A stretch of DNA of 63,647 nt, counting the filler, from Octopus bimaculoides (Eukaryota), in NCBI RefSeq assembly GCF_001194135.2. It is 8 parts of 8 records of this genome, joined end to end, with 100 filler letters (N's around TTAATTAATTAA, not from the genome) between each part and the next. Parts side by side here need not be neighbours in the genome. Positions count along the whole stretch, not along the records: positions 6,723 to 20,196 come from NC_068988.1; 7 more parts are not named here. One strand, given 5' to 3'. Shown piece by piece: positions 5,813 through 20,196 of this stretch. Position 1 is the first letter of the stretch. Each line of letters begins with the position of its first letter. Under the pieces are notes generated by a model. The model was not told the origin of the DNA. It saw nothing but the letters and a program-made list of their open reading frames with translations, and ran no database searches. A program made the position numbers and the translations under genes.

Positions 5813-7029
5813 AATAATAATAATAATGATAATAATAATTACAAAAATTATTATTATTTTACTTACAAGCAAAGCGACAAACATTTAAGGCGGGTTAATC
5901 TGAAATCATCGGGAGTAGGATGAAATCAATTTCATCCTAATACGCGATAATCTAAATGCGATTTCAAGTTACCCGGAGCTAAGCTGAAAGGGAGCGGGTA
6001 ATCTAACGTCGCAACAGCGGTGTCCCTTTCAGGAGCGAAACATTGTAATGTCAGTCATATATATATATATATATATACCATGGAGACAGGGTTAACCCCA
6101 GCCCTGTGAGTTGTGGGTGTCATGTCAGACCTAAGCCCGGGTCCCGCTGTTTTATATTTCTTTTGTTAAGTGTCTGCTTTGAACATGCAAACTCATGCAG
6201 CGAGAGTTTATTTGAATTTTCAAAGCGTTTTCGCTGAGTATATAAGACTGCATTCCCCTACAGCGCCCCCTGTGCGGGGGATGCTGGTCCTTCGTAAGAA
6301 TAGTCAACAGATTCCACTGTTACTAGAACAACCTGAAATGAAGTGCCTTGCCCAATGACACAACTCACCACCCGGTTCGAAAATTGAACCCACGATCAGC
6401 TGATCTTGAGTCCAACACTTAGATCACCAGCCTTACAAGCAATTAATACCCGACACTGTTGGCACTCGTGTTTATCTGAGTATACAGAAGAAGAAGGAGG
6501 AGGAGGAGGAAGAGGAGAAGAAGAAGAAGAAGAAGAAGAAGAAGAAGAAGAAGCAGAAGAAGAAGCAGCAGCAGCAGCAGTAGTAGTAGTAACAGCAGCA
6601 GCAGCAGCGGCAGGAGCAGCAGNNNNNNNNNNNNNNNNNNNNNNNNNNNNNNNNNNNNNNNNNNNNTTAATTAATTAANNNNNNNNNNNNNNNNNNNNNN
6701 NNNNNNNNNNNNNNNNNNNNNNGAGAGGAAGATCTGGGGGAATGGTAACGACAGGCTGAAGTGGAGAAGGGGTGGGTGGAATAGAAGTAGGAGGGGATGA
6801 AGTAGGGTTAGGAGGGCCGGTCGGGATGGTGGAGGGCTGGGAGGGAGGGGGTGGAGTGTGTGTATACATACATACATATATATATACATACATACATATG
6901 CTCATATGTAACTACGAGTATACACACATTCACACACACACATATACACACACAGACATACATATATGTACACTGAACCACAAAACAAACGCGAGACGTG
7001 TGTGACTGTGAAATATGTTTTAATTTCAT

Positions 7030-7601
7030 TATGTCAGATAAATTTTGATAAATCTGATAAAGTCAATTTCTTGGATGCACTCTGCCAGACCACAGTGGTT
7101 GGTTGTGATGTGTTCTGATAGTGGGCGGATCCAGCACATCGAAATTGTAGGGAGTGACATGTTCAATAGAATGTATGCCCTCCCTGAATGTTCAAAACGG
7201 CCATACATTGTCGGTACATGGAGTGCATAAGGTAGTTCACAAACGCCATTGGTCCCTGTTGGCACCATACCCTGAGGAAAGCTGCCTCTAGTTCCACCTT
7301 GAAAGCTGCCTCCAGTTCCGCCTCGAAACCACCTGGTTCAACCGTCTCTGGATTTCATCCCACAAGTGTTCAATTGGGTTCAAATCCGGGCTGAGAGAGC
7401 CGGTCATGGCATGGTTCCGATGTTGTGCTGATGCAAGAAGCCGATGGTGATTATGGCCGTGTGGGAGGGAGAATTGTCCTGCTGGTACATGTGGCTATAG
7501 TGAGGCGCTAAGATGGGCCCGATGTGAGGTCTTAGGACCTGGTCAACGTAGCACTGCGCTGTGAGGCCATTCCCTCTGCCTACACCAACATTTTGGAACA
7601 C
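7030..7601 (-). mobile_element. Tc1-family transposase C-terminal fragment, frameshifted
   Basis: Minus strand gives LTAQCYVDQVLRPHI..YQQDNSPSHTA followed by PALSPDLNPIEHLWDEIQRRL, the second D and the E region of a Tc1 DDE domain. Confidence 0.85.
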
Positions 7602-9897
7602 ATGGGGCTCAATTCTCTGATTCAGGCCTGTAGTACCTCAAACCATGATGCTTTGGTCACACCACGCGTCTGTGTCCATGACACATGCGTCTGTAGCGTT
7701 CACATCTCCTACGTCACACATTCACTCTGCCATTTACTCTGCCATACATATGTATGTGTGTGCGTGTGTCTTTGTTTCCCCCCCACCACCACCATTACCG
7801 CTCGTCAATCAGTGTTGGTGTGTTTAGGTCTCCGTAAGTTAGCAGTTCGATAGAATAAGTACTAGGCTTAAAAAAAAGTCCTGGCGTCGATTTGTTGGCC
7901 TAAAACCCTTCAAGCCAAGCTCCAGCATGGCTGAAGTCGAATGGCTGAAACAAATAACAGAATAAAAGAATAATAAGAAATTAAGCCAGAAGATGAATAA
8001 CACAATTCGCGAAGGAACAACAAAAGGTAATTTATCTAATATGAACTTTGCAATAACGAACGAATGTCATGCATGCTCTAATAACTACAACGGTATTAGT
8101 AATCTAAGAAAATACAGGGATAATACTGCTGACAGTAGGTACATTGAAAATTCTAATGTTCATATTATCCGTAACAACAGCGATGAACGTAACGAAAGAT
8201 ATTTAGGAAATACGAGAGATGGAAAGAAGAAGTATAAAGAATAAGGGTGCTGTAAATAGAGGACTAAAGAGAAATTGTACTTTCACAGACGAAAGAGTAT
8301 CTACTCTAGAAATTCAGTGCATGCATCGTATCTGAAGAAACAAGTATACAGTGAGTACCAAGGGAGGTGTGTACGAGTATATTGGGGCAGCTGTGGAGTT
8401 TTCTTCAGAATTCGATATCGGAACAATGTTGCCTGTTTCAGTTGAATTGATATAAAACAGTTAACCTCTCTAGCACGCTTCATATAGAGACAACAGGAAG
8501 ATGGAATTAGAAAATAGTGTTATATGATCCATAATAAAAAAGTGCACATCCGTATGATATATTGCTAGAACTTTTCCATTTAAGTTAAGAGTAATCTCTC
8601 TGCACTTTATTGTGATAAAATCTTAGTCAAGAGATGCTGCAAGACATAAGATGTAACCACAGACTCAAGTACACATGTTCCCGATATGATAGGGATATTT
8701 AATTATTCTGGCTATCAATAGTTCGCAAACATAATTTTTCTTTCCGTCGACATACATTGATACATCTCCCGACTGTGTAATATGGATAGCAAGGACGTGC
8801 CGCTTGGTTAGGTAATGTAGGCAGTGCCTGCTCTGAATGAAATAGATCGATAGTAACAGTTTCCTTTTATGGTAAAATATGCACACTATTCAATAAAACT
8901 ATGAAGGCTACTTTGATTAGCCCCTAACTTTCAATCGCAGTATTAAAGCTACGCATAATACTGCTGCAGTACACGTGCTACGTACATTCTTACAACAACG
9001 GGAGACATTTCGTAATTCGGTTGCAATTTATAGTGAACCGATTGACAACACAGCTTTCATTCTTTGGCGTAGCGTAAACATAGCTGTTATTCAGCACAAG
9101 ATAAGTCAAGACTGAATATACTTAAATAAATTGCGTTCTATTCTTGCCCACCACAAAAATCTATTCATATAGCAAGTTATTAATTTCCAATACGACCGTT
9201 ATGTTGGGTGACATGCTATGATTTGAGGGTTATATTTTGCCTAGAAATCTGTTTTCAACACCGAGATGAGGATTCATAATTTGGCAACATCTTCATGCGT
9301 ATGTAACGACGGAAATAGCGAATAGCGCTTTCAAAATCATTATACATTCACTCATACTCAACCATGCACACACACAAGCACAGTGGTTGCTGAGTATACA
9401 GTTATAGTTTATTATCGTTTAGTATTTGCTGAGATAAAATTCTATTAGAAGTTCTGCTTCTTATCGTTATATTTACATATAAATGCATCTATGTCATAAA
9501 GTATGTCCTGGAGATTTTGTTAATTGATTAATCCAGTATGATTATTATGATCAAATATATATAAAGGATTATATTTTACATTATATTAAGTAGTATTTAA
9601 GCCACTAGAAAAGTGATAACATATCCATTAATGAAAGGCGTGTTGTGATTTGATCACAAGTACACTCCCAGATATTAACGATTATATGTTAACGGTTTCT
9701 GCGAAAGAGTAGTGGGTAAAATGTTTTTATAGAAGCAGTTACACAATCACAAAACAGACACAAAGTTTATAAAAAAAAATTGCACACACTCAAAGTCGTA
9801 CATATGCAGGAGAGTATGTGAATCTTTGTACAAGAATAAACATTTATTTAACAAAGTTGAAAGATATTTACAAGGTTCATCAATCACTGTTTAATCT

Positions 9898-10956
9898 ATG
9901 GAATCACCAAATGAAGTAACCAAAATGTGGAAGACAAGTTCATGTAATATAGATATGGAAAGCACCTCTCTATCACTAAAAGCAGTAAAAGAAACCAGTC
10001 TAAATGGATATATACAGAAATGCAAACATGTAGCAATTGTATGCTATGTTCCTTCGAAATTTAACTTAGAAATCTGGAAAAAGTCTACCCTGAAAGCACG
10101 AATTTTTTATCTCTGTCTCCTTGTATTATATTTGGTTCCATCCTTTGATACATTTCGTCTTGCATGGTTCATAGTAGCAAATTTTTCATCAGAGAATAGT
10201 GGAGAGGTTTTAGCAAAACTTCTTGTTATGTTTATAAAATTATTCTCAACTGCAACTGCTCTAATCATTATCTGGAAACGAGATGATATAAATAACTTAA
10301 TCTAGGAATATGAAGACTATATACCAGTACATCAGGATGATGGATTTATGGAGAAATACTACAAAATTGGAATGCGTTCTCTCAAATCTACCGCCTGTTT
10401 AAATTTTCTGTCATCTTTTGTATTTCAAATTATTTTCCCCTTAGCTTTCCGGGACCCCCTTTATTTTCTGGACGTCTTAACTTTCCCTGTATCAGGAGAC
10501 AGCAATTTATATTTGCTTATGTTGACGATAAGTTTTCTAACTTCTACATTCAGCACATTTATTTTACTTCCTAGTATAACTCTAGTTGATACATTTGAAT
10601 CATTCTTCATTGATGAATATAATTATTTGTCAGAGATATTCAGAAACTTCATACACGAACATCAAGGTCATCAGAAACATATGTTCGAAGAACATGCAAA
10701 TCGCAGTGAAGGATTAATTGAACTAATTAACCAACATGCAAAACTTTGTCAATTATTAAATATTACAAACAAGGTATTTCAGATTGTCACTGCTGTGATA
10801 ATATTGCTGTACATGATAAACCTTTGTGCGATAGCATATGAACTTTCAAATAACCTAGTCACTGCCAAAAGCTATACATTCCAAATTGTTCCTGCAGCAA
10901 TGAGTGCAATATTTTGCTTATGTCGGCTCCATAAAGGAATGAAGGTTAATGTCAGT
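9898..10956 (+). pseudogene. Gustatory-receptor-like (GRL/7TM ion channel) large coding exon, copy 1, with one in-frame TAG at 10303-10305
   Basis: ORFs 9898-10305 and 10348-10974 are in the same frame (offset 450 nt) and align end to end with copies 2 and 3. About six hydrophobic segments; GR-like 'LINQHAKLCQLLNITNKVFQ' before TM5; ends at a GTAAGT donor (10957). Confidence 0.75.
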
Positions 10957-11330
10957 GTAAGTATTTCTTTGTAGCATTTTCTAATGAATAATTGTTTAAT
11001 GATTAAATATCTTCTCTATTTTTTATAAAATATGTATATTTAACGATATTCGCAGACATGTCTGTTTTGCTGAGATGGCCGCTCAGCGACAACGAAATTT
11101 CAGCTTCGCTCTCATACTGAGGTGCATCGGTCAAGTGTTTTCTACAGTAGCCTCATGCGGACTAATCCCTTGTGCGTAAATTTAGTAGACGAAAATCTTT
11201 GTAAAAACCGTGACAAACACATTTGTATACACACACAGACAGACATACAAAGATACACAGACACACACACATACACACATATACATACATATAAATATAC
11301 ATACGTATGTATATATGAATATAAACTCAG

Positions 11331-11383
<53 letters not shown>

Positions 11384-11835
11384 AAATTATGTATATGTGT
11401 AAATATAAACATAATTGTTAGTTTTATAAATGCGTTTGTGTGTAAGAAATCGCTTGCGATCATGTTTGAATATAAGCTATTCATTGATGGATTGACGAGG
11501 AACACTAATTAATCTTTAATAGAATCATAACATTAGCTAATTATATTGAATGTATGTATAAATGACATCATCCTGATATGACAATCACGCATGAAACTCA
11601 CTAATTATAAGCGCATTATATTAAAAGCTAACTGATTCTAAATGACATGCATTAAAAATATTGGAAGAATACATTAGGGCGTGGTAAACATTAGTGTATA
11701 GACAACCAGAGTTTATGTTGGATCAAAAATTATTTTCTTTATTTGCCACAGGATTTAATGTTAAACTATTATTCGGACGCTTAGTCCTACAAAATCTATG
11801 ATGAGATAATTCAATTTAAGCAGATACCAATTTTT

Positions 11836-12918
11836 ATGGCCTTATCATCTTTACCAAAAATTGTTTCAAACATGGAATTATTACATAGAAATGTGGAAGT
11901 AAGTGACTCTTACAATATAAATACCGATCAATCTAAATCAAATGCGATAAAAGATACTATTCTGAATTCATTTCTGCTAAAAATTAAAAAGCTTTCCATT
12001 ATGGGACTCTTTCCTTACGGGATAAATGTAGAAATGTGGAAAGTTTCTGGATTAAAGACACAAATACTTTATATATTAATCCCATTCGTGTATTTAATTT
12101 CTATGCTTGATATTATACGTTTGCCTTGGTTTATCATAATAAACCATTCGAAGGAAAATCTCGGGTCGCTCTTTGGGAAAAGTTTTCTTCTTTTGTTGAA
12201 GACATATCCATGTATAATTTCCATAAACATGTTTTGGAACAGATTTAATATCAACAGGTTAATTCACGAGTTCGGTACCTACATTCCAATAAACCAAAAT
12301 GCTAACTATATGGCTCGATATAACACCCTGGGTACATATTTTATCGTATATAACGCATGCTGTATTGTCGTGTTGACTTTTGCGGTCCACGTCATTTTAC
12401 CTATGACACTGGCAGATCCGGATTTCTTCTTTGATGTCATGGCTTTCCCGATATTACGTGGGAGCGAATTATTTTTAATTAGTTTGATAATTAATTGGAT
12501 GATAAATACATTGGTGACAATTCTCATTACACCAAATTATATCGTACTTGTTGGATTACAGTTAATCATGATAGATGAGTTTAAATTTTTATCACAGACA
12601 CTTCAAGTCTATTTTCCGGAAAACCAAGACGACCATACAAATATATCTGCCACCCAAACTCCTTGCGTTGATATATTAGATAAGATAATTAAGCAGCATG
12701 GTAAACTTTGTCGCTTACTTAAGATTAACAACAAAGCGTCTCATGTTACAGTCGCCATTACAGTTCTTCTGTTCATTATTACTTGTTGTGTACTAGCTCA
12801 TGAAATCTCCAATGGGTTAATAAATGAGAAGGGATATATAATCCAACTGATTTTTGGAATGGGAATAGCATCAGCTTGTTTCCTAATAATATCCAAAGGT
12901 CTTCAGCTCAATTTCAAT
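11836..12918 (+). CDS. GRL/7TM ion channel large coding exon, copy 2, intact; C-terminal exons not located
   Basis: Open 361-codon exon; paralog motifs DPDFFFDVMAFP, IDEFKFLS, IIKQHGKLCRLL, KGYIIQ; phase-0 donor AAT|GTAAGT at 12919. The ATG homologous to copies 1 and 3 is at 11872. Confidence 0.8.
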
Positions 12919-13493
12919 GTAAGTATTTAGTTTGCTATTTTTCCGCTTCAGTTATATTAAATGCCGATTCGTTCATAAATGCTGTTTAAATTCAAGTATT
13001 AGTCGTCATTTTTTTTAGTGGTGTTAGTGTGAGTTGTTACTGCACCTCTTTACCCAGAAACTCGAGTCTGTGCGTATCACGTCAGATCGACGATGGGAAG
13101 GATGACTTCCTTTTGCAAATACCGACAGGGTACAGTAAGTGTGTCAATAGCCAGCTGGAGGAGATGTTCTCCTGGGGCTAAAAGCAACAGTAGCATTCAC
13201 CCTTAGGGTCTAGTCGCATTTAAGTGGCAAATATACTTCACCTTGTCGTGCAGTTACGGTTAATACCTCTTTCAGAGATTTAACATTATATATATNNNNN
13301 NNNNNNNNNNNNNNNNNNNNNNNNNNNNNNNNNNNNNNNNNNNNNNNNNNNNNNNNNNNNNNNNNNNNNNNNNNNNNNNNNNNNNNNNNNNNNNNNNNNN
13401 NNNNNNNNNNNNNNNNNNNNNNNNNNNNNNTATATATATATATATATTCTTTGATATGTACTTTGATTGGTTTCGGTCAGTATTGGCGTACGC

Positions 13494-13740
13494 CATGTCT
13501 AACTTAATAGCACCGCTTGGCAAAGTCATTCGAATCAGAATTCGGACAACATGGCCCACATGAGGAGATAGTTATAATTTATGGTGACATATCCGGGTGT
13601 CGGAGGTTTACCAGGAGTTTTTGAAGGAATTTGTCCAAAGCCTTATCGAACTTTATTGGGCCTGTTTCTGCTTTAATGTATTTTGGTGTATTTAATGTAT
13701 TTAATATGATGGTTGGTTGTGAACTTAATGTGGCAGTCCC
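13494..13740 (-). mobile_element. CR1/L2-like LINE 3' fragment
   Basis: Minus-strand ..KFDKALDKFLQKL.. RT C-terminal remnant; shares 'gccatgtctaacttaatagcacc' with the LINE copy at 61952. Confidence 0.6.
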
Positions 13741-13753
13741 AGGAAAGGGAAGA

Positions 13754-13927
13754 ATGCTACTGCCATTTAGCCCCATGAAACACCGCTTCCAGTTGGCTAT
13801 GTGACTCAAGCGTTGTGTCCAGTTGGCTATGTGGCACAAGCGTTGTGTCCAGTTGGCTATGTGACACAAGCTTGTGTCACACAGCCAACTGGAAACGGTG
13901 TTTCCTGAGGCTACGTAGCAGTAGCAT
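13754..13927. repeat. Imperfect palindromic (MITE/foldback-like) element with internal 30-bp triplication
   Basis: Left arm atgctactgcc..gaaacaccgcttccagttggct pairs with right arm agccaactggaaacggtgtttc..gcagtagcat; centre AAGCTT (13868-13873); the unit ccagttggctatgtg.c.caagc.ttgtgt occurs three times. Confidence 0.8.
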
Positions 13928-14613
13928 AAATATATCATATTACTTGGTACGTCTCTGAAGCGGCCCGAAGATGGAATTAAAAAATTTTTGTATTATTTTC
14001 GTGGTATTTTAGTACGTCCTTTTAATGTTTTATCATCTCAAATTTTTATTACACCAAAGTATTATAACTTTCAAATGTAAATTCACTGTTTTATGTATCG
14101 CATCGATATTTATCCATTTATGTGCATTTTTATATTTATATTCTTGTATATGTTTCAGTCCAATGACAGTGGCCATGCTGGAGCACTTGGAATTTTTATA
14201 TTCGTTTTATAAATGTAGAAGAATATATGTATATATTTGATTTTCGAGTGTGGTTATTAATTACGTTCCTCTAGTTTTCGCTTGCATTGCCTCCATTGAA
14301 ATTATTAAGTGGTACACACACACATACACACACACACATATATATANNNNNNNNNNNNNNNNNNNNNNNNNNNNNNNNNNNNNNNNNNNNNNNNNNNNNN
14401 NNNNNNNNNNNNNNNNNNNNNNNNNNNNNNNNNNNNNNNNNNNNNNNNNNNNNNNNNNNNNNNNNNNNNNNNNNNNNNNNNNNNNNNNNNNNNNNNNNNN
14501 NNNNNNNNNNNNNNNNNNNNNNNNNNNNNNNNNNNNNNNNNNNNNNNNNNNNNNNNNNNNNNNNNNNNNNNNNNNNNNNNNNNNNNNNNNNNNNNNNNNN
14601 NNNNNNNNNNNNN

Positions 14614-14658
<45 letters not shown>

Positions 14659-15617
14659 GTGTATATGCATGTATATATAACAAAGCATTGAAACACCGAT
14701 TGAATTAGTATGTTAGCGGGGATGAAGCAAATCCCGTAAGGAGAATTGTTGTCAAATCATTATACATGATCGACTGAATACCCATAGAAAACTAAATGAT
14801 GTGCCGAACAAATGATTCAAATCTTGTGTCTTTGAAACTTCAAGTAAGCACTATGTGCCATTAAGCTATGTGAACATCCGCAACAGATACTATATTTATA
14901 AAAGCTAATATCTTAACATAGCAAAAATATTCTCATTCGACAATTAAAACAACACCACATTTTTGTAGCTGATATCTTTGGGCGAGATTTACACCGTAAG
15001 ATTCTTGTCATTGGTCTTTTTTCATTTAAATACAATAATTGCAGAGTTTTCTTTAAAAATGGCTTTAATATCTTGTCTCAATGTCAGTTCTGTGGGTTAC
15101 TTAACATTTGTTCCTCACTGGAACTCACACTAGGTTTTGAGAAACGTTGAATATATTCACCCACAGCCATTTATAAACGATAGATATACAGTACATATGT
15201 AAATATACTTTGACTAGTATCATTTTAATTACGAAACAAAATGTGCTTGTACGCGTGGATCGATGTATGTATGTTATTCGTATACTTATTAATTGTATTT
15301 GCTGAAAGAAACCTTATTAATTAGATGAATTATCGTTTATATCCTTAAGTAAATGTAAATCTTTTACATAGATGGAAAGTGGTAAAATAAATAAAGGCGT
15401 GATAATATTTTAATGGAAATTGCATTCATGGCTAATAGTATTTATTATACATCCACTGACGCAGTAAAGGCAGTTTTCAAAACATTGCGCAGTAGTTCAC
15501 ATGTAATCATTGAACCTAAGTTCAAATATAAATCTTCTGCCTAGTTTGTATTCAGGAGAATTTAGATATTCAAAATTTGTAATAACTTAGCAAGGTTTAT
15601 CAACGGCTGTTTCAATT

Positions 15618-16652
15618 ATGGAAACATCTGAAACAGTCACTAATATTTGGAAATCACATTCTGTTCAGATAAACATAAACCTCTCTCCCAAAACAGCAAA
15701 TGAGACCACATTCTTTGAATATCTGGAGAAAATAAGACGCTTTACAATTGTTTGTTCTATTCCTTCCAAAATGAATTTAGACATTTGGAAAAGAACTGAG
15801 CTGACAGCACGCATTTTTTACCTATGTCTCCCTGTCATCTATTTAATCTCAGCATTTGATATTTTACGGTTCATATGGTTTATTGTAGAAAGTTTCTCAT
15901 CAACGAATGATAAATATATTTTAGGTAAATGTTTTTTCTTTTTGATGAAAATACTACCAGAAATACTTGTACTAATCATTGTCTGGAAGCGAACGCACCT
16001 CAACGAAATGATCAGCGATGCTAAAACTTTTATTCCAATATGCCCAAAGAATATATTGATGAAGAGATATATTAGATTTAATTCACATTTTGTCGCAATT
16101 CATTTAGCCATTAATGTTGTTTTATCTACTATATTCCAAATTATTTTGCCAGTAGTTCTTGTTGACCCGGAATATTTTCTCGATGTGGCATTCTTTCCAC
16201 TGTCACGTCCGAAAAATTTCATTTTAATATTAAATTTCTTGACCGATGTATTCCATACGATACATATAGTACCATGTACCACATTTTCCACTATAATATC
16301 GGCAACTTGTATAGAAGAATTTAAATATTTATCACACAAGTTTAGAAACTACATGCAGGAATATGAAGACTGTGGACTCTTTCAGAAACCTATAAATCTC
16401 AATGAAAAGATAAGTGAAATAGTTAACCATCATACTAGACTACGTCAATTAACGAAACGCCTAAACTCGGTATTTCAGTTTTGGAATGGCACGACCGTAT
16501 TACTTTTCCTTATTATCTGTTGTGTCACAGCTTATCAAGTAGCAAATGGCTTAACTAATACAAAAGGTTACGTACTACAAATTGCCATTGGAATAATGAT
16601 TGCACTATCTTGTATACATGTGATAGTCAATGGACTGGTGTTTAACTCCAGT
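15618..16652 (+). CDS. GRL/7TM ion channel large coding exon, copy 3, intact; C-terminal exons not located
   Basis: Open 345-codon exon; closely paralogous to copy 1 (ARIFYLCL, DPEYFLDV..FP, IEEFKYLS, IVNHHTRLRQL, KGYVLQI); phase-0 donor AGT|GTAAGT at 16653. Confidence 0.8.
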
Positions 16653-17220
16653 GTAAGTACCTTTTTTCTTCTGTATATTTAATGAGAATTTGCTTCATGT
16701 TTTTCTTTTGTAGATTCTTAATGAAATATAAAATTGAGAGATGGTAAACAAAGAAATATCATTTGTACAAAATATTCAAGTAAACATATTTGTCGCTAGA
16801 ATCCCTACATCTACAAAAATTAAACACGTTTTTTACATACCATGATTAGTAGAATGCAACGATACTTGATCTACGTCAGAATATCCAGAGTTTAAGTGAT
16901 GAAGTGTTTGATAATTGTATAATATTTTAAGGCTATGAACATTGTAACAACAATGCAATCGGTAAATACAATAGTTTATATGATAATGTTTTTTATACAG
17001 AGTTCACCTTTTTGATCTAGATGTAACTTTGTTCATGCGTCTGATGTAATTATCGGTTAAATTCCATAAATTATTAAGAGAAACAGTGCATTTTATTAGT
17101 ACATACCAATTTTTAACCCGATTAAGGGAACAAGAAATAAGGTGATTAATTTACACAGAATTTGATAAGGGTCTAAAGTTCGGTCATATAATTTTTGTCG
17201 CATTATTTTTCCTGCGATGA

Positions 17221-17445
17221 AAGGCGGTGAGCTGGAAGAACCGTTAGCGCGCCGGGTAAAATGTTTAGCAGTATTTCGTTTGCCTTTGGGTTCTGAGTTC
17301 AGATTCCGCCGACGTCGACTTTGCCTTTCATCCTTTCGGAGTCGATAGATTAAGTACCAGTTGCGTACTGGGGTCGATCTAATCGACTGGCCTCCTCCCC
17401 GAAAATTTCGGGCCTTTTGTCTACAGTAGAAAATATTATTTCTTG
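17221..17445 (+). mobile_element. tRNA-derived SINE (family A)
   Basis: aaggcggtgagctggaagaaccgttagc..ttctgagttcagattcc (B-box-like)..aagtaccagttgcgtactggggtcgat; same family as 50331 and 56399. Confidence 0.8.
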
Positions 17446-19811
17446 CGATAAAGCAGACCTTCAATCCAACATTTATTTTGTGATTCATTTTTGAAACCTT
17501 CATTATTGAAGCTTCACACTGGGCCGATATTTTTTTTTTATTTAACTAAGTTTCTTAGGCACCACTGTAAGAAAGCATAATAGGTTTAGTATATGATAAT
17601 TAATATCTTTTCTGCTGTAGGCAACTGGTACTTAATTTATCGACCCCAAAAGGATGAAAGGCAAAGTCGACCTCAGCGGAATTTGAACTCAGAACGGAAA
17701 TATATGATGATTAATATTATCATAGCAAAAAAACATGGTACTTGCAGTGTGGTTTCTCGTTTGCTTCAATGAAGTTGAGAGATATTAGTGTCACACAAGC
17801 GGGGCAGGACAACAGATAAAGGCAGGGTTAATATGAACCACGTCTTTATAGCGGTGAAAATGAATTTGTTTATAAACAAAGCCTCTACAGAGAAAACAGC
17901 AAAGTTACAGACGCAGACGATGACAATTCAAAACAAAAACTAAAAACCCAGACAACGCTGGAGGTAACCTCTGGTCCGGGTGGAGGGAAGGGTTTTGATA
18001 AGTAATTATCATCATACCACTGAAGCTTAATTAAATGAAGTTATTTAGAAAAAGGTTTTTAATTTTAGCCGATGTTACTAGTTCTTGGATGGTAAGTGTT
18101 ATTGTCGAATACATATACAGTTTTGAATATATATATATATATATATATCTTCCATGAGGCACATAAAATATACGGTAACACATTTTCAGCTGATAGAGTC
18201 ATGATCACTATTCAGCTTGGTTGAACAATCAATCGGGATGTACAGTAAGGTTTGTACTATTCATATTTTCAAATGCTGAATGAAAGACATGGATCGTGAG
18301 ACCTGCATTTGGTTGATTTTCTTGAGCCACCATATCATCCTTGCAATGCCTTTCCGTCACAAGTTCATCCACTCACAGAGGAGTGGATTCAAGCAACGTG
18401 AAATGAAGGATTTTGCTCAACAACACAACGTACAGCCCGTTTATGAATCGAAACCGTGATCTTGCGATAGTGAGTGCAGCACCTAACCGTTTCGATGTTA
18501 CAGAAGGAGTCCTATAACGTTTAAAACACAAGCCCGGACTCACTCACACATATAAACACATGCATACATTCAGCCACAAGCACAAACACACTCATATATA
18601 ATAACACACACACACATACTTTTTTTTATATTAGAGCATTATGGAATACTTCAGAGAGAGCATAATCCATTTTTGCATTCATTACAATTTGAGAAATAGA
18701 AAATGACGTGGTGTGTTGTGTGGTTTTGAACAAGTGCCATGAATTTGAAATTACTTGCCCTATCGTTGATAATATGCACCCACACAGAAGTCATGAAATT
18801 GCATGTTGTTTAAGAAATACCAAGCTGAATCGAAGAGAGATGCCGGTCAACAAAGATCATGCAAATGTAGAATCCGGGACAACCGCCCACTAGACTGTAC
18901 CTAGCTCGCAAAATCGACAGTGCCTAGCACCAGCTTTGAGTCAAACAGCAGTGTTGAATATAAAACACATATATGAGCAACAGAATTCATGTTCACGTTC
19001 AAAAACAGTTATTACAAGCATAAATATTCTTTTGTCATCTCTGATAAAAACGAGCTACGGCTTTGTTGAATTTTATATGATTAATGCGTGTGACAAGTCT
19101 CACGAATTCAAAATTAACTGACATAGGAACGGGGTCTCCAAGCCAAAGATGCCGTTTGTTCTTTAAGCGAAAATTTTCACCCAAGGCAGTAACAGTTTGA
19201 ACAAAGGAATTGAAATGCTAGCACCTTGTATACACGCGGTTATGTATTTCTCATGTCAATAAATCCCCCCTTGAATTGCGTCGTTGCTATGAAAAAAAAC
19301 GTTGGTTCCGAAATATTTAATATGGTTTACTGATATTTGTTTTAAATGCATGGGGGTGCGTCTATGTGAGTGTATGTGTGTATATATGCATATGCGTATA
19401 TGTAACCATGCATGTAAAATTATCTGTATAATGTCTTGTGTAAGTATGAGTGTACTTATGTGAGTATGTATGTTTTGTAATTGATGTGCTTAATATCCGC
19501 TTAATTGACTCTATACCCGCTCAGCTTGATCCCTCTTATAGCATTTCTTTACTTTGTGGAATGATCCCCTATAAAGTTTGAATCTTATGAACACTATTCA
19601 GTGCCCATTATTTATATTATTTACATTTGACGTATATTTGTCCTCATCTTCTTTGTTGTTAACACAACGTTTCGGCTGATATACCTTCTAGCATCCATCA
19701 GGTGTCTTGAGGAAATTTCGAAACCTGGAATCTCATTCCTAAGGTTTTTTTCGATGTTATTATTATTACTATTATTATTATTATTATTGGCATGTAATTC
19801 CAGGCAATGAA

Positions 19812-19859
<48 letters not shown>

Positions 19860-19866
<7 letters not shown>

Positions 19867-20196
19867 CAAAAAACGACAAAGAGCTAGAAACACTACTACA
19901 GACAGTACACAGCTTTACCAAGGAAATAGAAATGAAATTCGGATTAGAAAAATGTGCCAAAGCAACCCTGAAAAGAGGAAAATTAGTTAAAAGTAGCAAT
20001 ATAACACTAAATAAAGCCAATGAAATAAGAGAACTAGACAAAAGCCAACCATATAAGTATTTAGGAGTCAATGAACTAGATAGGATACAACATACACAAA
20101 TGAAAGAAAAAATAAAGAAAGAGTACTATAGACGAGTTAGATCAATACTAAAAACAGAGCTCAATGCTAAAAACAAGATAATGGGTATCAACACTT
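19860..20196 (+). mobile_element. R4/Dong-like non-LTR retrotransposon RT fragment
   Basis: MKFGLEKCAKATLKRGK..YKYLGV..KEYYRRVRSILKTELNAKNKIMGINT is typical of the post-YADD region of R4-clade RTs; truncated by a gap. Confidence 0.8.

What the first reader, a model, noticed from the sequence alone, without database searches (positions are those of the whole stretch)
9898..16652. Tandem cluster of three gustatory-receptor-like (7TM ion channel) genes in a probable cephalopod genome
Seen directly: three same-strand paralogous exons of 345-361 codons with about six hydrophobic helices and shared motifs DP.(Y/F)F(L/F)DV..FP, (D/E)E(Y/F)..LS, I..H..L..L and A(Y/H)(E/Q)..N.L...K.Y..Q. Established knowledge: the 'H..L...' helix before TM5 and phase-0 introns after TM6 are hallmarks of the insect GR/OR and animal GRL superfamily of ligand-gated channels. 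Well-known cephalopod chemosensing relies on nAChR-derived chemotactile receptors, so a locally expanded GRL family would be a candidate second, little-described chemoreceptor system (inference).
Basis: partly seen in the sequence, partly recalled or inferred. Interest (0 to 1): 0.8.

Follow-up and report, generated by a model that had tools for sequence, protein, structure and literature searches.

The report
Octopus taste-receptor gene with alternative first exons
The three "genes" are the first three of about fifteen interchangeable first exons of one Octopus bimaculoides gene of the insect-type gustatory-receptor ion-channel family, all spliced to the same pore-forming tail about 50 kb downstream; the family and this gene layout are known from insects, but neither seems to have been described for cephalopods.

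Summary
Three + strand paralogous reading frames of 353, 361 and 345 codons (9898-10956, 11836-12918, 15618-16652) each carry six hydrophobic helices and end in phase 0 at a GTAAGT donor. Both N gaps lie between exons 2 and 3, not in coding sequence.

The family assignment is supported. The deduced spliced proteins pass the Pfam 7tm_7 and/or 7tm_6 thresholds. AlphaFold models match only insect OR/Orco/GR structures (TM-score up to 0.72), and GPCRs score below 0.2.

"Three genes" is not supported. The piece is 100% identical to O. bimaculoides CM046608.1. No TM7 exon lies in it. RefSeq LOC106880487 joins exons 1 and 2 to the same three short phase-0 exons 57 kb downstream. About 15 variable exons, at least 9 of them intact, precede those constant exons. 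O. sinensis isoforms show the same pattern.

This is the Gr28b/Gr39a-type layout of tandem long first exons with shared C-terminal exons, here in a cephalopod. The likely product is a set of tetrameric ligand-gated cation channels with different ligand pockets and one shared pore helix. Function, expression and the way an exon is chosen are untested. I rate it a new member of a known kind, of moderate interest.

The parts
9898..10956 (+). Variable exon E1 (353 codons, TM1-TM6). It is the 5'-most variable exon of O. bimaculoides LOC106880487 and is 77% identical to the variable part of O. sinensis LOC118764605 isoform X2.
   Evidence: the deduced E1+constant product scores 7tm_6 37.2 bits and 7tm_7 30.1 bits
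10303..10305 (+). In-frame TAG in E1 (Gln in the orthologues). It is a nonsense allele, a pseudo-exon or an assembly error. The RefSeq X1 model starts at the next ATG (10348).
10957..10962 (+). E1 splice donor GTAAGT, phase 0
11836..12918 (+). Variable exon E2 (361 codons, intact ORF, TM1-TM6). Its last 117 codons are 100% identical to RefSeq LOC106880487 isoform X2 (P0030), which continues into the constant tail.
   Evidence: E2+constant scores 7tm_7 32.4 bits
12919..12924 (+). E2 splice donor GTAAGT, phase 0. The junction ...LQLNFN|AHQLADH... used in P0030 shows this donor in use.
13296..13430 (.). Assembly gap in the non-coding interval between E2 and E3 (intronic for E1/E2 transcripts). 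It does not touch coding sequence.
14347..14613 (.). Second assembly gap in the same interval, flanked by CA/TA microsatellites. It does not touch coding sequence.
15618..16652 (+). Variable exon E3 (345 codons, intact ORF, TM1-TM6). No public gene model was found for it. The AlphaFold model has pLDDT 78, and its top 15 PDB hits are insect OR/Orco/GR structures.
   Evidence: E3+constant scores 7tm_6 29.5 bits and 7tm_7 25.1 bits
16653..16658 (+). E3 splice donor GTAAGT, phase 0
16659..20196 (+). Start of the long intron that runs to the constant exons. It holds no variable or constant exon, only interspersed repeats. The next variable exon lies beyond the piece (L003 20646 = window-equivalent 23213), and the constant exons lie at L003 67322-73768.

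Best explanation
The piece is the 5' end of one Octopus bimaculoides gene (RefSeq LOC106880487) of the gustatory-receptor / GR-like family of seven-transmembrane ion channels. The gene has an array of about 15 tandem long 'variable' exons, each with its own ATG, encoding the N-terminus and TM1-TM6. At least 9 are intact and several are degenerate. E1-E3 are the first three. After the array come three short constant exons (23, 30 and 17 codons, all introns in phase 0). These encode the end of the S6 extension, helix S7a and the pore-lining TM7/S7b with the motif TYSIVAYQ. Each mature mRNA joins one variable exon to the constant exons, and downstream variable exons are removed as intron. This part is shown for E1 and E2 by the RefSeq models and for the O. 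sinensis orthologue by its two isoforms. The rest is inferred from homology to solved insect OR/GR structures: the proteins form tetrameric ligand-gated cation channels. The variable exon supplies the ligand pocket (S2-S4, S6), and the shared tail supplies the pore helix and part of the cytoplasmic anchor. One locus would therefore yield about ten receptors with different tuning and identical pore and assembly surfaces. By analogy with Drosophila Gr28b/Gr39a, exon choice is most likely by alternative promoters. E1 as assembled is a null exon because of a premature TAG.
For: Identity and position: the piece is 100% identical to O. bimaculoides CM046608.1, with window coordinate = L003 coordinate + 2567.

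Family: Pfam 7tm_7/7tm_6 hits are above the gathering score for the deduced E1/E2/E3+constant products and for P0001 and P0003. The profile's best PDB sequence hit is an odorant receptor, OR10. The AF2 model of the orthologue (pLDDT 77, pTM 0.74) gives 19 top Foldseek hits that are all insect OR/Orco/GR, with Orco 6c70 at TM-score 0.70/0.72; GPCRs have TM-score <0.2. The model of window exon E3 alone behaves the same way.

Architecture: no TM7-coding sequence lies anywhere in the piece. P0030 equals the last 117 residues of E2 plus the tail AHQLADH...TYSIVAYQTRS. The gene models 7781-73768 (273 aa = E1 from the ATG after the TAG, plus the tail) and 10001-73768 (187 aa) share one 3' end. There are 15 variable-exon hits between L003 7331 and 66919, followed by c1-c3 with AG/GT sites in phase 0. 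O. sinensis isoforms X1 and X2 are about 34% identical over the first 333 residues or so and 100% identical over the last 70, with a shared 3' coordinate. The neighbouring gene in O. sinensis has two variable exons and three constant phase-0 exons, and two species' annotations use different variable exons.

Constraint: dN/dS among the variable exons is 0.38-0.61.

Against: There is no transcript, expression or functional evidence. The RefSeq models are computational and N-terminally truncated (X1 starts after the TAG, X2 at an internal Met), so use of the full-length E1/E2 ORFs is inferred. E3 and the other variable exons have no model. A conserved YAG|G acceptor-like motif 9-89 nt upstream of many variable-exon ATGs suggests that the exons may not be true first exons, which leaves the choice mechanism open. 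The TM7 motif lacks the final F (TYSIVAYQT). Non-arthropod GRLs with a known role are not all chemoreceptors, e.g. Nematostella Grl1 in body patterning (Saina 2015, cited in PMC11526382).
Confidence: 0.85

Rival explanations
1. One reading: three independent tandem GRL genes, each with its own downstream TM7 exons.
For: Each ORF has its own ATG and its own donor. The E2-E3 interval contains two gaps of only estimated size that could in principle hide small exons.
Against: The 880 bp between E1 and E2 are fully sequenced and hold no TM7-like coding sequence, and nothing TM7-like lies anywhere else in the piece. The RefSeq models join E1 and E2 to the same constant exons. The O. sinensis isoforms share a 100% identical tail and a 3' coordinate.
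Confidence: 0.03
2. The exons in the piece are decaying relics: pseudo-exons that are no longer expressed or translated.
For: E1 has a premature TAG. About six of the roughly 15 variable exons in the array are broken by stops, frameshifts or gaps. No expression data exist, and the RefSeq models are truncated.
Against: E2 and E3 are intact over 361 and 345 codons with consensus donors. dN/dS is 0.38-0.61, below 1. E1 has only a single lesion and no frameshift compared with its orthologue. Arrays that mix intact and pseudogenic exons are normal for insect GR loci (PMC6175461).
Confidence: 0.1
3. The gene architecture is as in the best explanation, but the proteins are not chemoreceptors. They would serve another role known for this superfamily, such as developmental signalling, or light or temperature sensing as with Gr28b(D).
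For: Functions of GRLs outside arthropods are largely unknown. Nematostella Grl1 acts in body patterning, and Gr28b(D) is a thermosensor (PMC11526382). No tissue data exist here.
Against: Many rapidly diverging tandem variable exons (31-68% identity, dN/dS around 0.5) attached to an invariant pore are the pattern typical of environment-facing, ligand-diversified receptors. This is suggestive, not decisive.
Confidence: 0.25
4. The proteins are G-protein-coupled receptors or some other unrelated helical membrane fold.
For: They have seven hydrophobic helices. The Pfam scores are modest (25-37 bits).
Against: In the Foldseek searches GPCRs have E>0.4 and TM-score 0.12-0.17, against 0.5-0.72 and probability 1.0 for OR/Orco/GR. 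K+R residues are enriched in the N-terminus and in the TM2-3 and TM4-5 loops, which fits an N-terminus-inside topology (read directly from the sequence).
Confidence: 0.01

Closest known systems
Drosophila Gr28b / Gr39a / Gr23a and cockroach Gr60a-m type loci (insect GR/OR genes with tandem alternative long first exons and shared 3' exons)
   Same: Same protein superfamily. A long variable exon encodes the N-terminus to TM6. Three short shared final exons are separated by phase-0 introns and encode TM7. Arrays mix intact and pseudogenic variable exons (PMC6175461).
   Different: The host is a lophotrochozoan (octopus), not an arthropod. About 15 variable exons is at or above the largest insect example quoted there (13 in Gr60a-m). 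Sequence identity to insect GRs is only about 10-15%. The mechanism of exon choice is untested here, and there is a possible acceptor-like motif upstream of the ATGs.
Animal GR-like (GRL) proteins of Mollusca and other non-arthropods (Robertson 2015; Eyun 2017; Benton 2020)
   Same: 7TM with the TM7 motif and the conserved 3' phase-0 introns. The sequences pass Pfam 7tm_7.
   Different: I found no published description of cephalopod members or of their variable-exon arrays. At sequence level the family is very narrow: 17 clusters among 1.84 billion representatives.
Orco / insect OR and GR tetrameric cation channels (PDB 6c70, 7lic, 8v00, 8x82, 8uvt)
   Same: The predicted fold superposes with TM-score 0.5-0.72. 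The long S4-S6 cytoplasmic extensions and the S7a/S7b arrangement are present.
   Different: 10-15% identity. No experimental structure, stoichiometry or conductance is available. No co-receptor has been identified.
Clustered protocadherin and UGT1A loci (variable first exons plus constant exons)
   Same: The formal gene layout is the same: an array of variable exons, each joined to shared constant exons.
   Different: The proteins are unrelated. In those loci each variable exon has a demonstrated promoter of its own, which is not shown here.
Cephalopod chemotactile receptors (CRs, nAChR-derived)
   Same: They are the candidate ionotropic chemoreceptors of the same animals, and they are tandemly expanded (PMC11526382).
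   Different: They have an unrelated fold (pentameric Cys-loop). CRs have demonstrated ligands and sucker expression. The GR genes here have neither.

Membership tests
Gustatory receptor / GR-like family (Pfam 7tm_7, clan with 7tm_6; 7TMIC superfamily) | Significant match to the family profile over the whole protein | tested here: met
   Deduced spliced products: E1+constant scores 7tm_6 37.2 and 7tm_7 30.1 bits; E2+constant scores 7tm_7 32.4; E3+constant scores 7tm_6 29.5 and 7tm_7 25.1, the last just under the cut-off (cut-offs 25.8 and 26.6). The orthologues P0001 and P0003 score 35.1 and 33.8 bits on 7tm_7. The variable exons alone mostly fall below threshold.
Gustatory receptor / GR-like family | OR/GR fold: seven helices with long cytoplasmic S4-S6 extensions and S7a/S7b | tested here: met
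   AF2 models have pLDDT 77-78 and pTM 0.74. The top 19 (full-length orthologue) and top 15 (window E3) PDB hits are all insect OR/Orco/GR, with TM-score up to 0.72.
Gustatory receptor / GR-like family | TM7 motif TYhhhhhQF | tested here: inconclusive
   Constant exon c3 encodes ITYSIVAYQTRS. T, Y and Q are present, and the final F is replaced by T. The neighbouring gene has FTYVIVVLQTK.
Gustatory receptor / GR-like family | [quoted passage not shown] | tested here: met
   Three phase-0 introns are present: after TM6 (the GTAAGT donors of E1-E3), after c1 and after c2. Splice sites were read in L003 and, for the neighbouring gene, in L002.
Gustatory receptor / GR-like family | Intracellular N-terminus (topology inverted relative to GPCRs) | not testable with these tools
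   Only the positive-inside pattern of K/R read from the sequence and the fold match are consistent with it. No experimental topology exists.
Gustatory receptor / GR-like family | Forms a ligand-gated cation channel (tetramer) | not testable with these tools
   Inferred from homology only.
GR loci with alternative long first exons (Gr28b/Gr39a type) | Several tandem long 5' exons, each with its own ATG and donor, and no TM7 exon between them | tested here: met
   E1-E3 lie in the piece with no TM7 sequence. About 15 such exons lie in L003 before the constant exons.
GR loci with alternative long first exons (Gr28b/Gr39a type) | Different variable exons joined to the same C-terminal exons in mRNAs | tested here: met
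   Shown at the level of RefSeq models only. O. bimaculoides X1 (E1 part) and X2 (E2 part) share c1-c3. O. sinensis X1 and X2 share a 100% identical 70-aa tail. No cDNA was examined.
GR loci with alternative long first exons (Gr28b/Gr39a type) | A separate promoter for each variable exon | not testable with these tools
   No transcription-start data are available. An acceptor-like YAG|G motif upstream of many ATGs leaves a leader-exon model open.
G-protein-coupled receptors | GPCR 7TM fold | tested here: not met
   The best GPCR hits have E>0.4, probability about 0.1 or less and TM-score 0.12-0.17.

The most novel reading that the evidence does not exclude
Octopuses have a second ionotropic chemoreceptor system besides the nAChR-derived chemotactile receptors. 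It would consist of GR-family channels diversified by arrays of about 15 variable first exons on a common pore exon set, not by whole-gene duplication. Single sensory neurons in suckers, lips or the olfactory organ would pick one variable exon each, a protocadherin/Gr28b-like receptor-choice mechanism. This layout would be either inherited from the protostome ancestor or evolved convergently with insects.
Probability: 0.25. Interest if true: 0.75.

Novelty: new member of a known kind. Interest (0 to 1): 0.5.

Why it matters
Cephalopod chemosensation is currently explained by chemotactile receptors, IRs and GPCRs. I found no study of GR-family channels in these animals, even though the genes are present, clustered and partly intact. 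Three things make the question directly testable. The real gene structure is now clear: one gene, about 15 variable exons and one shared pore tail. Full-length coding sequences can be deduced for E2 (431 aa) and E3 (415 aa). The public models are N-terminally truncated. The full-length isoforms can therefore be cloned, localised and screened for ligands. The locus also extends the 'alternative long first exon' design of insect GR/OR genes to Lophotrochozoa. That bears on whether the design is ancestral, and it corrects how such loci should be counted, as isoforms and not genes, in receptor-repertoire surveys.

Tried and rejected
1. I searched the piece for the TM7/constant exons with tblastn (word size 2, E up to 100) and with all family proteins. 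Nothing credible turned up, which led to the shared-exon hypothesis.

2. The word-indexed protein searches returned only 2-5 hits. The exhaustive HMM search gave 17. Most of those are unnamed single-exon ORFs from read assemblies that run through the donor site, so they gave no taxonomy.

3. The O. sinensis orthologous locus could not be fetched because its range (162 kb) is too long. I used the neighbouring gene (L002) and the O. bimaculoides locus (L003) instead.

4. I looked for conserved promoter or leader blocks upstream of the variable exons by blastn. The hits were mostly microsatellites. V4 and V6 share 72% identity over 460 bp upstream, which is about the neutral level, so there is no evidence for a special element. 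A short YAG|G motif remains unexplained.

5. Pfam scans of the other ORFs in the piece, Rfam and tRNA scans found nothing.

6. The GPCR and other-fold readings were rejected by the fold search.

7. Literature searches for cephalopod GR/GRL and for the locus identifiers found no dedicated description. Robertson 2015 itself was not in the searchable library.

Full report
**What is in the sequence.** Between 9898 and 16652 the + strand carries three long paralogous reading frames.
- E1 is 9898-10956 (353 codons), E2 is 11836-12918 (361 codons) and E3 is 15618-16652 (345 codons).
- Hydropathy shows six membrane-spanning segments in each.
- Each frame ends in phase 0 at a consensus donor: AGT|GTAAGT, AAT|GTAAGT and AGT|GTAAGT.

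Two points need correcting or settling.
- E1 has an in-frame TAG at 10303-10305. Its closest relatives have Gln there, so this is a single CAG-to-TAG change. The frame is otherwise intact.
- The two N gaps (13296-13430, 14347-14613) lie in the non-coding stretch between E2 and E3, next to TA/CA microsatellites. They interrupt no reading frame.

**Source.** The whole piece is 100% identical to Octopus bimaculoides chromosome CM046608.1 (GCA_001194135.2). I fetched that region as L003; window coordinate = L003 coordinate + 2567. The gaps are the assembly's own. "Probable cephalopod" is therefore correct.

**Protein family.**
- The variable exons alone barely register in Pfam (E1: 7tm_6, 25.9 bits), and the match stops at profile position 246 of 313. 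That is what you expect when TM7 is missing.
- With the constant tail added as the gene models splice it, the scores rise. E1 scores 7tm_6 37.2 and 7tm_7 30.1 bits. E2 scores 7tm_7 32.4. E3 scores 7tm_6 29.5 and 7tm_7 25.1. The cut-offs are 25.8 and 26.6.
- The O. sinensis orthologue isoforms score 35.1 and 33.8 bits on 7tm_7.
- A profile of 18 family members has a mosquito odorant receptor as its only sub-0.01 hit among PDB sequences.
- An AlphaFold2 model of the full-length orthologue (pLDDT 77, pTM 0.74) was searched against the PDB with Foldseek. It gave 19 consecutive top hits to insect OR, Orco and GR structures at probability 1.0, with TM-scores of 0.5-0.72 in all but one entry (8x84, 0.42/0.44); Orco 6c70 scored 0.70/0.72. 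The first GPCR came at E=0.43 with TM-score 0.12.
- A model of window exon E3 alone (pLDDT 78) gave the same picture.

**Not three genes.**
- No TM7-coding sequence exists anywhere in the piece, including the fully sequenced 880 bp between E1 and E2.
- O. bimaculoides RefSeq LOC106880487 isoform X2 (P0030) consists of the last 117 residues of E2, 100% identical. Directly after ...LQLNFN it continues with AHQLADHIYAM...TYSIVAYQTRS. That junction is the donor I had predicted at 12918|12919.
- In L003 the two annotated products share one 3' end at 73768. One is 273 aa: E1 from the first ATG after its TAG, plus the tail. The other is 187 aa.
- tblastn and splice-site reading place the three constant exons at L003 67322-67390 (23 codons), 70320-70409 (30 codons) and 73715-73768 (17 codons plus stop). 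All are bounded by AG/GT in phase 0.
- Between E1 and c1 there are about 15 variable-exon copies on the same strand. At least nine are intact from ATG to a phase-0 GTAAGT-type donor: E2, E3, V4, V6, V8, V9, V12, V13 and V15. The rest are broken by stops, frameshifts or gaps.
- E1-E3 are the first three of this array.

**The same design in O. sinensis and in the neighbouring gene.**
- LOC118764605 isoforms X2 and X1 are about 34% identical over the first 333 residues or so and 100% identical over the last 70. Their ranges end at the same coordinate, and the start points are 57 kb apart.
- The adjacent gene LOC118764606 has two variable exons and three constant phase-0 exons. Its O. sinensis model uses the first variable exon. 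The O. bimaculoides UniProt entry A0A0L8FL56, auto-named "Gustatory receptor", uses the orthologue of the second.
- More GR-type exons flank the array in L003, so these genes form a cluster.

**How it most likely works.**
- Shown at the level of sequence and gene models: one variable exon (N-terminus to TM6) is joined to c1-c3.
- In the AlphaFold model the constant part forms the end of the S6 cytoplasmic extension, helix S7a and the last membrane helix S7b.
- Inferred from solved OR/GR channels: S7b lines the pore of a tetramer, S7a contributes to the cytoplasmic anchor, and the ligand pocket lies within S2-S4/S6.
- The locus would therefore make about ten receptors that differ in the ligand-binding body and share the pore and part of the assembly surface.
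- dN/dS among the variable exons is 0.38-0.61. That indicates constrained but fast-evolving coding sequence.
- Exon choice by separate promoters is an analogy with Gr28b/Gr39a, not a result. A YAG|G acceptor-like motif is conserved 9-89 nt upstream of many variable-exon ATGs. It may mean that short leader exons exist. I could not resolve this.

**Comparison with what is known.**
- Robertson and colleagues describe the same layout for many insect GR and OR genes. [quoted passage not shown] Arrays reach 13 isoforms, and some exons are pseudogenic (PMC6175461).
- GR-like genes are reported for Mollusca. Their defining features are the TM7 motif and conserved 3' introns (PMC7746228). Both features were examined here. 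The introns are met. The motif is partly met: T, Y and Q are present, and the final F is T.
- I found no paper that describes GR-family genes in cephalopods or these loci. Reviews of cephalopod chemosensation discuss chemotactile receptors, IRs and GPCRs (PMC11526382, PMC11886862).
- The genes are, however, already in RefSeq and UniProt with Pfam assignments.

**Verdict.**
- The "three tandem genes" reading is replaced by three alternative 5' exons, one of them nonsense-bearing, of a single variable-exon GR gene.
- It is a new member of a known kind, not a new kind.
- Its value is practical. It gives corrected full-length isoforms, shows that the public annotation is truncated and incomplete, and offers a clear and so far unexplored candidate receptor system in octopus.
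- Chemosensory function, expression and channel activity remain untested inference.

Noticed in passing
window 9808-9809 (E1, 89 nt before the ATG), 15554-15555 (E3, 63 nt before the ATG), about 11820 (E2, 'aagcag|atacc'); L003 upstream of V4, V6, V12, V13; L002 upstream of both variable exons: A YAG|G(A/T) splice-acceptor-like motif recurs shortly upstream of the start codons of many variable exons, e.g. 'ttgcattcag|g' in E3/V4/V6 and 'tttttgcag' in the O. sinensis neighbour. It may mark non-coding leader exons or a promoter-proximal element. It bears on how a variable exon is chosen.
   Followed up: partly
window 10348 and 12568 (L003 7781 and 10001): The RefSeq models of LOC106880487 are N-terminally truncated. 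X1 starts at the first ATG after the E1 nonsense codon. X2 starts at an internal Met of E2, although the E2 ORF is open from 11836. E3 and at least six further intact variable exons have no model in the index.
   Followed up: yes
L003 20646-66919 (O. bimaculoides, beyond the piece): Twelve further variable-exon copies follow E1-E3. Seven look intact: V4, V6, V8, V9, V12, V13 and V15. Five are broken or cut by assembly gaps: V5, V7, V10, V11 and V14.
   Followed up: partly
L003 142-228 (+), 77485-78492 (+), 81681-81785 (-): Exons of other GR-family genes flank the array: the last exon of the A0A0L8FL56-type gene upstream, another variable-like exon downstream, and a c2-like exon on the opposite strand. 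The family is therefore clustered.
   Followed up: no
L002 24278-24283 (O. sinensis LOC118764606, second variable exon): The homologous donor reads GCAAGT instead of GTAAGT. This is either a rare GC donor or an inactivated exon. The O. sinensis model does not use this exon, whereas the O. bimaculoides orthologue does.
   Followed up: no
window 6880-8192 versus L002 38522-47784: The DNA upstream of E1 is 81-94% identical to DNA just downstream of O. sinensis LOC118764606, with one block inverted. This shows conserved synteny of the two neighbouring GR genes between the two Octopus species.
   Followed up: partly
window 7744-8027, 17221-17432, 17617-17700; tandem repeat 13788-13878; microsatellites 11227-11379, 14314-14340, 14614-14679, 19757-19865: Short interspersed repeats have several copies elsewhere in L003 and L002. 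There is also a 30-nt tandem repeat (3 copies) and TA/CA/AAT microsatellites, some of which border the assembly gaps. The ORFs in these regions have no Pfam match.
   Followed up: partly
window 19932-20196 (+): An ORF that resembles the C-terminal part of a retroelement reverse transcriptase by eye (…KCAKATLKRGKL…YKYLG…) runs into the piece's edge. It had no Pfam hit at E<=1, so this is unconfirmed.
   Followed up: partly
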